Shown in pieces: positions 17,660 to 17,718 of a stretch of 63,932 bases of DNA. The notes under the pieces are model-generated. The model worked only from the letters and a program-made list of their open reading frames with translations, was not told the origin of the DNA and made no database searches. The DNA lies in NCBI RefSeq assembly GCF_001194135.2, contig NC_069003.1, positions 22,338,225 to 22,402,156 of the forward strand. Direction: 5' to 3'. The translations under genes and the position numbers were made by a program. This DNA comes from Octopus bimaculoides. Lineage: Eukaryota. How positions within the stretch are numbered: the first letter of the stretch is position 1; the number at the start of each line of letters is the position of its first letter.

Positions 17660-17718
17660 ATTCCAGATCCCAGATTTCTGGCTTTGCATAATAAATGCTT
17701 TGCCTTCATCAGTGAAAT
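17660..17718 (-). ncRNA. Putative minimal type I hammerhead ribozyme (Penelope-type) in BACE intron 8
   Basis: ATTTCA-CTGATGA-A-GGC.AAA.GCAT.TTATT.ATGC.AAA.GCC-A-GAAA-TC.TGG.GA-TC-TGGAAT: core boxes, 6-bp stem I, 3-bp stem III and AUC cleavage triplet. Non-canonical A.A at 10.1/11.1. Confidence 0.5.

What the first reader, a model, noticed from the sequence alone, without database searches (positions are those of the whole stretch)
17660..17718. Near-complete hammerhead ribozyme on the sense strand of BACE intron 8
Seen on the - strand, the BACE pre-mRNA strand: stem I ATTTCA/TGGAAT (6 bp, one G.U); core CUGAUGA; stem II GGC-AAA-GCAU-(UUAUU)-AUGC-AAA-GCC; GAAA; stem III AUC/GAU with a 3-nt loop; cleavage triplet AUC. 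Known: this minimal type I layout with a very short stem III is typical of Penelope-like element hammerheads, which can act as dimers, and intronic hammerheads have been described in amniote genes. It lies about 340 nt upstream of the exon 9 acceptor, in an intron human BACE1 lacks. Caveat: 10.1/11.1 is A.A rather than G-C. Inference: it may be a relic, or a self-cleaving switch acting on beta-secretase pre-mRNA.
Basis: partly seen in the sequence, partly recalled or inferred. Interest (0 to 1): 0.72.

Follow-up and report, generated by a model that had tools for sequence, protein, structure and literature searches.

The report
Hammerhead-like motif, probably not a ribozyme
A 59-base stretch in an intron of a mollusc beta-secretase gene can be drawn as a hammerhead ribozyme, but every test available here suggests a chance or decayed look-alike, not a working self-cleaving RNA.

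Summary
The bases are exactly as described, on the - strand at 17718..17660. They give CUGAUGA, GAAA, A15.1-U16.1, C17 and three nominal helices, on the sense strand of intron 8 (19024..17317) of a BACE-like gene, 349 nt upstream of the exon 9 acceptor.

A motif of this quality is uncommon: about 0.1-0.4 % of simulated 64-kb windows have one. That still implies tens to more than 100 chance copies in a genome of 2-3 Gb.

Nothing beyond the drawing supports a ribozyme:
- No Rfam hammerhead model matches, even at E<=10 on 91 nt.
- The 10.1/11.1 pair is A.A.
- Helix I is worth -1.8 kcal/mol and the helix III hairpin does not fold alone.
- The hammerhead fold makes up 0.017 % of the ensemble, and several other helices compete with it.
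- Helix II, including its AAA/AAA loop, is what a direct repeat of GCAAAGC would give. Helix III and the 3' strand of helix I come from a tandem ATCTGG[G/A].
- The window holds no second copy, no tandem partner for a dimer and no Penelope-like context.
- The same intron of a bivalve orthologue has nothing comparable.

Cephalopod orthologues could not be reached, so conservation is untested.

Best reading: an inert look-alike, either chance (about 55 %) or a decayed transposon-borne hammerhead (about 35 %). A working intronic ribozyme has about 5 %.

The parts
17713..17718 (-). Nominal helix I, 5' strand (AUUUCA)
   Evidence: Read directly. The duplex with 17660-17665 is worth only -1.8 kcal/mol. 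The next three positions outward are U.U, A.A and U.U.
17706..17712 (-). Core box C3-U4-G5-A6-U7-G8-A9 (CUGAUGA)
   Evidence: Read directly. It is one of 27 CTGANGA occurrences in the window, both strands counted. In a 141-nt context the MFE structure pairs GAUGAAGG with the downstream CUUCAUC at about 17621-17628.
17679..17705 (-). Nominal helix II: A.A at 10.1/11.1, then GGC/GCC, an AAA/AAA internal loop, GCAU/AUGC and the loop UUAUU
   Evidence: Read directly; -8.0 kcal/mol in isolation. The two arms contain a direct repeat, GCAAAGC twice at a spacing of 16 (GCTTTGC on the + strand). Because its ends are self-complementary, that repeat gives exactly this pattern of pairs and the A-only internal loop.
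17675..17678 (-). Core box G12-A13-A14-A15.1 (GAAA)
   Evidence: Read directly. CAGAAA (17680-17675) is perfectly complementary to the upstream UUUCUG (17729-17724), which is a competing helix.
17667..17675 (-). Nominal helix III: AUC/GAU with loop UGG
   Evidence: Read directly. The hairpin is not predicted to fold on its own (0.0 kcal/mol). Its 3' arm and helix I's 3' strand are two copies of the tandem repeat ATCTGG[G/A].
17666..17666 (-). C17, giving the predicted cleavage triplet AUC; scissile bond 17666/17665
   Evidence: Read directly. AUC is reported as rare in natural hammerheads (title of reference 30 in PMC6155905).
17660..17665 (-). Nominal helix I, 3' strand (UGGAAU)
   Evidence: Read directly. 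The MFE structure instead pairs AUUUCA with the neighbouring repeat copy UGGGAU.
17317..19024 (-). Intron 8 of the BACE-like gene (1708 nt, phase 1), which hosts the motif
   Evidence: Donor G|GTAAAT at 19025/19024. Acceptor TAG|GTGCC at 17317/17316. The reading frame ...[14 protein letters not shown] runs on across the junction. The intron holds two antisense SINE-like copies (17885-18258 and 18540-18896), an N gap (17863-17883) and TA-rich microsatellites at 17384-17457 and 17745-17800.
17170..17316 (-). Exon 9 ([30 protein letters not shown]...)
   Evidence: It aligns to the bivalve and lizard BACE-like proteins.

Best explanation
This is an inert hammerhead look-alike in AT-rich, repeat-prone intronic DNA. 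The two core boxes (CUGAUGA, GAAA) happen to lie 28 nt apart. Short local direct repeats supply the 'helices'. GCAAAGC...GCAAAGC gives helix II together with its AAA/AAA loop. ATCTGGG-ATCTGGA gives helix III's 3' arm and helix I's 3' strand.

The RNA is not expected to adopt the hammerhead fold to any useful extent or to cleave at physiological Mg2+. It therefore has no effect on the beta-secretase pre-mRNA.

Shown: the sequence, its context, the missing model match, the weak energetics, the repeats and the lack of other copies in the window. Inferred: that it does not cleave and is not under selection.

The confidence below is for the inert reading as a whole. That covers pure chance origin (about 0.55) and a decayed transposon-borne copy (about 0.35), which is listed separately as a rival.
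For: 1. None of Rfam 15's hammerhead models reports the site. This holds at gathering score over the whole window, at E<=10 in 601 nt and at E<=10 in 91 nt.
2. The 10.1/11.1 position is A.A. G10.1-C11.1 is described as highly conserved in both canonical and PLE hammerheads (PMC4209133).
3. The hammerhead fold costs -6.8 kcal/mol against an MFE of -11.2, and is 0.017 % of the ensemble. The z-score of the 68-mer is +0.17.
4. Helix I is worth -1.8 kcal/mol and the helix III hairpin 0.0.
5. Competing 6-8 bp helices involve both core boxes.
6. The arms of helix II are a 7-nt direct repeat. The helix III/helix I 3' region is a 7-nt tandem repeat. Identical rather than complementary arms explain the A-only internal loop.
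7. There is no other copy of 17600-17730 in the window and no other hammerhead-like motif. There is no tandem unit, and the adjacent SINE is a separate element on the other strand.
8. The chance rate of 0.1-0.4 % per window is of the same order as the density of real Rfam-detectable hammerheads in a cephalopod genome. The giant squid draft has 235 (PMC6962438). I take the genome size as about 2.7 Gb from my own knowledge, which gives about 0.5 % per window. This motif fails those same models.
9. The bivalve orthologue shares the intron position but has no hammerhead-like motif anywhere in 52.6 kb.
Against: - At its own stringency the motif is rarer than one window should give by chance.
- Every invariant core nucleotide is intact and all three helices are free of internal mismatches, apart from 10.1/11.1 and the helix II internal loop.
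- An unpaired nucleotide after A9 followed by a G-C pair is a hallmark of PLE min-hammerheads.
- A U.U mismatch at the base of helix II exists in about 60,000 weakly active axolotl hammerheads (PMC7229834).
- Engineered hammerheads without helix II keep reduced activity (PMC544870).
- No cephalopod genome could be searched, so neither copy number nor conservation was tested.
Confidence: 0.88

Rival explanations
1. It is the decayed remnant of a transposon-borne type I hammerhead, from a 5'-truncated Penelope-like element pLTR or a solo non-LTR retrozyme monomer. The element would have inserted into a (TA)n microsatellite within the intron and is now inactive. This rival is a sub-case of the inert reading.
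For: - Metazoan genomes carry hundreds to thousands of such motifs, most of them single and linked to truncated PLEs (PMC4209133). The giant squid draft genome has 235 Hammerhead_1 hits.
- The roughly 260-nt unique segment holding the motif lies between TA-rich microsatellites (17384-17457 and 17745-17800). PLEs show an insertion bias for microsatellites (PMC8557442).
- The motif has an extra A after A9 followed by G-C, and a long helix II (7 bp in all). Both resemble the PLE min-hammerhead consensus.
- Selection against active ribozymes in genes would favour survival of a crippled copy. Retrozymes are excluded from introns in vertebrates (bioRxiv 10.64898/2026.07.22.740005).
Against: - There is no second copy or related sequence in 64 kb that is otherwise full of repeats.
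- There is no PLE ORF, pLTR or tandem unit nearby.
- There is an extra A between C11.1 and G12, and loop 3 is not palindromic.
- Helix II arms that are direct repeats are not what descent from a selected helix predicts.
- There is no Rfam score at all, although the core and stems are 'intact'.
- TA-rich microsatellites are found throughout this window, so the flanks say little.
Confidence: 0.35
2. It is a working, weakly active variant hammerhead that cleaves the BACE-like pre-mRNA inside intron 8 and so tunes splicing or transcript yield. It would be an invertebrate counterpart of the amniote intronic hammerheads.
For: - The core is complete, on the sense strand and inside an intron.
- There is precedent for conserved intronic type I hammerheads in RECK, CTCL and DTNB (PMC6155905).
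- Mismatches at the base of helix II are tolerated with reduced activity in axolotl motifs.
Against: - It matches no Rfam model, including HH9 and HH10.
- There is no recognisable loop 1/loop 2 arrangement for the tertiary contacts needed for activity in vivo (PMC4209133; PMC6155905).
- Helices I and III are marginal, and the fold is 0.017 % of the ensemble.
- There is no partner copy for dimeric action.
- A single PLE-type motif showed no detectable cleavage in vitro.
- The motif is absent from the same intron of a bivalve orthologue.
- No conservation data exist.
Confidence: 0.05

Closest known systems
Minimal type I hammerheads of Penelope-like elements (min-HHR; Cervera & De la Pena 2014, PMC4209133) and metazoan non-LTR retrozymes (PMC7229834)
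   Same: - Type I topology with the same core boxes.
- A short, weak helix III and no evident loop-loop contacts.
- An unpaired nucleotide after A9 followed by a G-C pair.
- A long helix II.
- An AT-rich setting next to microsatellites.
   Different: - There is an additional A between C11.1 and G12, so 10.1/11.1 reads as A.A.
- Helix II is interrupted by a 3x3 A-only loop.
- Loop 3 (UGG) is not palindromic.
- There is no pLTR, PLE ORF, tandem repeat or second copy, and no family with covariation is in reach.
- The cleavage triplet is AUC.
Amniote intronic hammerheads (Rfam Hammerhead_HH9 and HH10; RECK, CTCL, DTNB introns)
   Same: A type I motif on the sense strand inside an intron of a protein-coding gene.
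   Different: - The amniote motifs are canonical, with conserved loop 1/loop 2 contacts and G10.1-C11.1.
- They are ultraconserved across species and are recognised by covariance models.
- This motif matches no model and has no conservation evidence.
Axolotl HHR_Amex2 (PMC7229834)
   Same: A mismatch at the base of helix II, and weak predicted or observed activity as a monomer.
   Different: - Amex2 has about 60,000 copies in tandem retrozyme repeats that can act as dimers.
- This motif is a single copy with no partner.

Membership tests
Hammerhead ribozyme (type I) | Invariant core: C3 U4 G5 A6 N7 G8 A9, G12 A13 A14, A15.1-U16.1, and H17 that is not G | tested here: met
   Read directly on the - strand: CUGAUGA 17712-17706, GAAA 17678-17675, U16.1 at 17667, C17 at 17666.
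Hammerhead ribozyme (type I) | G10.1-C11.1 pair closing helix II directly on the core | tested here: not met
   Positions 17705 and 17679 are A and A. PMC4209133 lists G10.1-C11.1 as highly conserved.
Hammerhead ribozyme (type I) | A match to a curated covariance model (Rfam Hammerhead_1, _3, _II, HH9, HH10) | tested here: not met
   No hammerhead hit at gathering score, or at E<=10 in 601 nt or in 91 nt.
Hammerhead ribozyme (type I) | Three helices that form around the core | tested here: inconclusive
   All three can be drawn without mismatches. However, helix I is worth -1.8 kcal/mol and the helix III hairpin 0.0. The whole fold is -6.8 against an MFE of -11.2 kcal/mol, or 0.017 % of the ensemble. 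Nearest-neighbour energies ignore stabilisation by the tertiary core.
Hammerhead ribozyme (type I) | Loop 1 / loop 2 tertiary contacts needed for activity at physiological Mg2+ | tested here: inconclusive
   Helix I is 6 uninterrupted bp followed by U.U, A.A and U.U, with no defined bulge or loop. Loop 2 is UUAUU, at the end of a helix II lengthened by a 3x3 internal loop.
Hammerhead ribozyme (type I) | Site-specific self-cleavage leaving 2',3'-cyclic phosphate and 5'-OH ends | not testable with these tools
   This needs in vitro transcription and end mapping.
Hammerhead ribozyme (type I) | Conservation or covariation among homologous copies | not testable with these tools
   No cephalopod protein or locus came back and metagenome scans found no relatives. 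The only related test: the bivalve orthologue shares the intron position but has no such motif.
PLE min-hammerhead / non-LTR retrozyme | Location in a PLE pLTR, or in tandem repeats of 150-450 bp, so that two motifs can act as a dimer | tested here: not met
   Self-BLAST finds no other copy of 17600-17730. Descriptor scans find no second motif in 64 kb. TRF finds only microsatellites nearby.
PLE min-hammerhead / non-LTR retrozyme | An unpaired nucleotide between A9 and 10.1, together with G10.1-C11.1 | tested here: inconclusive
   A 17705 followed by G 17704 fits this feature. But C 17680 is separated from G12 by an extra A at 17679, which the consensus lacks.
PLE min-hammerhead / non-LTR retrozyme | Palindromic 15.2-16.2 and loop 3 | tested here: not met
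   AUCUGGGAU is not a palindrome. Self-pairing needs two G.U pairs and a central G.G mismatch (-8.2 kcal/mol).
PLE min-hammerhead / non-LTR retrozyme | Membership of a multi-copy consensus family in the same genome | not testable with these tools
   The source genome is not available. Within the window there is no other copy.
Amniote-type domesticated intronic hammerhead | Deep conservation in the orthologous intron | not testable with these tools
   Octopod orthologues could not be reached. The motif is absent from the bivalve BACE-like gene.

The most novel reading that the evidence does not exclude
A single-copy variant type I hammerhead, with A.A at 10.1/11.1 and an interrupted helix II, is conserved in octopods. 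It slowly cleaves the beta-secretase pre-mRNA within intron 8. It would be the first domesticated intronic hammerhead in an invertebrate, and a natural example of a core-adjacent mismatch that is tolerated in vivo.
Probability: 0.04. Interest if true: 0.7.

Novelty: not a real feature. Interest (0 to 1): 0.15.

Why it matters
If it were real, it would extend domesticated intronic hammerheads from amniotes to molluscs and tie RNA self-cleavage to expression of a beta-secretase homologue. On the present evidence its value is as a caution. A full hammerhead core with three drawable helices turns up by chance about once per few hundred 64-kb windows of AT-rich animal DNA. Short direct repeats can imitate the helices. 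Such drawings therefore need support from a covariance model, copy number or conservation before they are read as ribozymes.

Tried and rejected
- Rfam at three scales: no hammerhead. The only nearby 'hit', mir-297 at 17748-17805 (32 bits against a gathering score of 90), is a TA/TG microsatellite hairpin and was rejected.
- Part of the neighbouring repeat? Rejected. The repeat at 17885-18258 is a SINE-like element with a tRNA-like head, oriented on the + strand. Its head abuts the N gap, and none of its other copies extends into 17600-17884.
- Orthologous cephalopod loci. The protein search returned only relatives at 31-48 % identity and no cephalopod. Exact look-ups of three window ORFs were not on record. 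A look-up of the bat BACE1 protein also failed.
- Family members in metagenomes. The exact helix II pattern gave 0 hits. The skeleton CTGATGAAGGC..GCCAGAAA gave 107 distinct matches. They were heterogeneous, the flanks printed for the fold-forming matches mostly read like coding sequence, and there was no recurrent family.
- The one match that completes a type I fold (L105, 5232-5279) lies in the 3' end of a 457-aa ORF and has no Rfam hit. I treated it as chance. This collection therefore gives no evidence for a natural class with A.A at 10.1/11.1.
- Supplements of the two key papers were searched for cephalopod or mollusc hammerhead data: nothing is held.
- Dimer model. Self-pairing of the helix III region is possible (-8.2 kcal/mol), but the window contains no second copy.
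- A positive control, running a repaired A10.1G/A11.1C sequence through Rfam, could not be done.

Full report
**Observation.** On the - strand the window reads ATTTCA-CTGATGA-A-GGC-AAA-GCAT-TTATT-ATGC-AAA-GCC-A-GAAA-TC-TGG-GA-T-C-TGGAAT from 17718 down to 17660. This gives:
- helix I: AUUUCA/UGGAAU, 6 bp with one G.U
- the core boxes: C3-A9 at 17712-17706 and G12-A15.1 at 17678-17675
- helix III: A15.1-U16.1 plus two more pairs, closed by a 3-nt loop
- C17 at 17666, with the scissile bond at 17666/17665

**Gene context.** The - strand carries exons of a gene whose closest database relatives are named beta-secretase 1, at 31-48 % identity.
- Exon 8 is 19112..19025 and ends G|GTAAAT.
- Exon 9 is 17316..17170 and starts after TAG|.
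- The frame ...[21 protein letters not shown] runs on across the junction.
- Intron 8 is therefore 19024..17317 (1708 nt), and the predicted cleavage site is 349 nt upstream of the acceptor.
- Exon 9 is not the last exon. A further exon lies at about 15040-14855.
- A bivalve (Tegillarca granosa) BACE-like gene has an exon that starts at the same place, TVLGAVVMEG.
- A lizard BACE2-like gene encodes ...SSSNNALVIGATVMEGFY... in one exon.

So the statement that vertebrates lack this intron holds for that relative. Human BACE1 itself could not be checked.

**What else is in the intron.**
- Two copies of a SINE-like repeat (17885-18258 and 18540-18896) belong to a family with at least eight copies in the window.
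- The alignment shows that this element has a tRNA-like head and lies on the + strand, antisense to the gene. Its head abuts an assembly gap at 17863-17883.
- TA-rich microsatellites lie at 17384-17457 and 17745-17800.
- The roughly 260-nt stretch between them, which holds the motif, has no other copy in the window.

**Is it more than chance?** A descriptor fitted to the candidate requires:
- CUGANGA and GAAA
- helix II of at least 3 bp, with or without a 10.1/11.1 mismatch
- helix III of at least 3 bp with a loop of at most 10 nt
- H17 that is not G
- helix I of at least 5 bp

It finds this one site in the window, both strands counted. Among windows simulated from the window's own composition, 6 of 1500 (order 1) and 2 of 1500 (order 3) contain at least one hit.

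| Descriptor (minimum bp in helices I, II, III) | Share of simulated windows with a hit |
|---|---|
| 5, 3, 2 | 1.3 % |
| 4, 3, 2 | 3.5 % |
| 4, 2, 1 (min-hammerhead-like) | 16 % |

The motif is therefore unusual for one window. Scaled to the number of 64-kb windows in a 2-3 Gb genome, that rate gives roughly 50-150 chance copies. For comparison, the giant squid draft genome has 235 Rfam Hammerhead_1 hits (PMC6962438). With a genome of about 2.7 Gb (my own knowledge, not in the retrieved text), that is about 0.5 % per window. The prior for a real hammerhead and the chance rate are thus of the same order, and this motif fails the very models that define the 235.

**Model-based test.** No hammerhead family of Rfam 15 reports the site. 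This holds at gathering score over the whole window, at E<=10 in 17400-18000 and at E<=10 in 17645-17735.

**Energetics.**
- The 68-mer folds no better than its shuffles (z = +0.17).
- The hammerhead secondary structure is worth -6.8 kcal/mol against an MFE of -11.2, and structures containing all three helices make up 0.017 % of the ensemble.
- Taken alone, helix I is worth -1.8 kcal/mol, the helix III hairpin does not form (0.0) and helix II is worth -8.0.
- In the MFE structure AUUUCA pairs with UGGGAU, the neighbouring repeat copy, instead of UGGAAU.
- In a 141-nt context GAUGAAGG pairs with the downstream CUUCAUC.
- CAGAAA and AAAGCA each have perfect 6-nt complements just upstream.

Nearest-neighbour energies ignore tertiary stabilisation of the core, so this counts against the fold but does not rule it out.

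**Origin of the helices.** The two arms of helix II contain the same word, GCAAAGC, as a direct repeat 16 nt apart. Its ends are self-complementary. Two copies therefore pair GC with GC at both ends and leave AAA opposite AAA, which is exactly the observed stem, 3x3 loop and stem. The segment AUCUGGG-AUCUGGA is a tandem 7-nt repeat. It supplies helix III's 3' arm and helix I's 3' strand. Arms that are identical rather than complementary are what local slippage in microsatellite-rich DNA produces. A helix kept by selection would not look like this.

**Comparison with known families.** PMC4209133 lists what marks genuine PLE min-hammerheads:
- consensus families with covariation
- a highly conserved G10.1-C11.1
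- palindromic 15.2-16.2 and loop 3
- location in pLTRs or tandem arrangements that allow dimers

A single motif showed no detectable cleavage in vitro, and dimers cleaved only weakly.

The candidate has the extra A after A9 followed by G-C. It also has an A between C11.1 and G12, a non-palindromic loop 3, no partner copy and no PLE context.

Two findings argue for tolerance. Axolotl HHR_Amex2 carries a U.U at the base of helix II and still cleaves weakly (PMC7229834). Engineered hammerheads without helix II keep some activity (PMC544870). Slow cleavage at high Mg2+ therefore cannot be excluded. The AUC triplet is reported as rare in natural hammerheads (reference title in PMC6155905). In vertebrates retrozymes are depleted from introns (bioRxiv 10.64898/2026.07.22.740005), so any hammerhead that survives on the sense strand of a gene is likely to be crippled.

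**Relatives elsewhere.**
- No cephalopod sequence could be reached.
- The bivalve orthologue (52.6 kb) has no hammerhead-like motif even under the loosest descriptor.
- No Rfam hammerhead was found there, nor in the lizard and sea-spider genes.
- The exact helix II pattern has no match in the metagenome collection.
- The skeleton CTGATGAAGGC..GCCAGAAA gives 107 heterogeneous matches with no recurrent family, and the flanks printed for the fold-forming matches mostly read like coding sequence.
- One of those matches (L105) completes a type I fold, but it sits in the 3' end of a 457-aa ORF and has no Rfam hit.

**Verdict.** The identification as a ribozyme rests only on the drawing. The most likely reading is an inert look-alike:
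- chance origin helped by local duplications, about 55 %
- a decayed Penelope- or retrozyme-derived hammerhead, about 35 %
- a functional intronic ribozyme acting on the BACE-like pre-mRNA, about 5 %

Decisive tests are copy number and conservation in octopod genomes, in vitro cleavage with mutant and repaired controls, and end mapping at 17666/17665.

Noticed in passing
window 17885-18258, 18540-18896, 40564-40960, 44948-45354, 36880-37110, 33053-33321, 52068-52258, 47458-47624, 30880-30975: An abundant repeat of about 400 bp with a tRNA-like head (GGCTGTGTGGTAAG...GGTTCCGGGTTCAGTCCC on the + strand) and an internal (CA/TA)n stretch. It is probably a tRNA-derived SINE. Two copies lie antisense in BACE intron 8. 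ARAGORN calls no tRNA in 14000-21000.
   Followed up: partly
window 17863-17883: An assembly gap (run of N) inside intron 8, about 145 nt upstream of the motif on the - strand. The sequence between the SINE head and the motif is therefore incomplete.
   Followed up: no
window 17748-17805 (-): A weak Rfam mir-297 match (32 bits against a gathering score of 90, E = 8e-4). It is a TA/TG microsatellite hairpin, not a credible miRNA.
   Followed up: yes
window about 21059 (-) and 21775 (+): Two similar segments of about 45 nt in inverted orientation, about 700 bp apart (CTGAWGATTTCCAGNGGAATGAAATNACATGAT...). They could be the terminal inverted repeats of a small DNA transposon (MITE).
   Followed up: no
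window about 52800-55800 (+): A run of ORFs that look like a retrotransposon gag-pol remnant. The run includes a CCHC zinc knuckle (CFYCGFTGHIKLHC) and segments that look like RT, RNase H and integrase.
   Followed up: no
L121 (Tegillarca granosa BACE-like gene) about 13300-16750: About 45 tandem copies of a unit of about 70 bp that encodes the exon fragment RTLGGLDSTLYTGQLYYTNI. This is an exon-derived minisatellite lying upstream of the real exon at 16608-16745.
   Followed up: no
L105 5232-5279 (+): A metagenomic sequence with the same CUGAUGA-A-GGC...GCC-A-GAAA skeleton, plus a 7-bp GC-rich helix I and a 3-bp helix III. It overlaps the last codons of a 457-aa ORF and has no Rfam hit, so it is probably chance.
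   Followed up: partly
window 17317/17316, compared with L121 48472 and L122 23070-23243: The phase-1 intron before GAV(I/V)MEG is shared by this gene and a bivalve BACE-like gene, but is absent from a lizard BACE2-like gene. The intron position is therefore old in molluscs, or was lost in vertebrates.
   Followed up: partly
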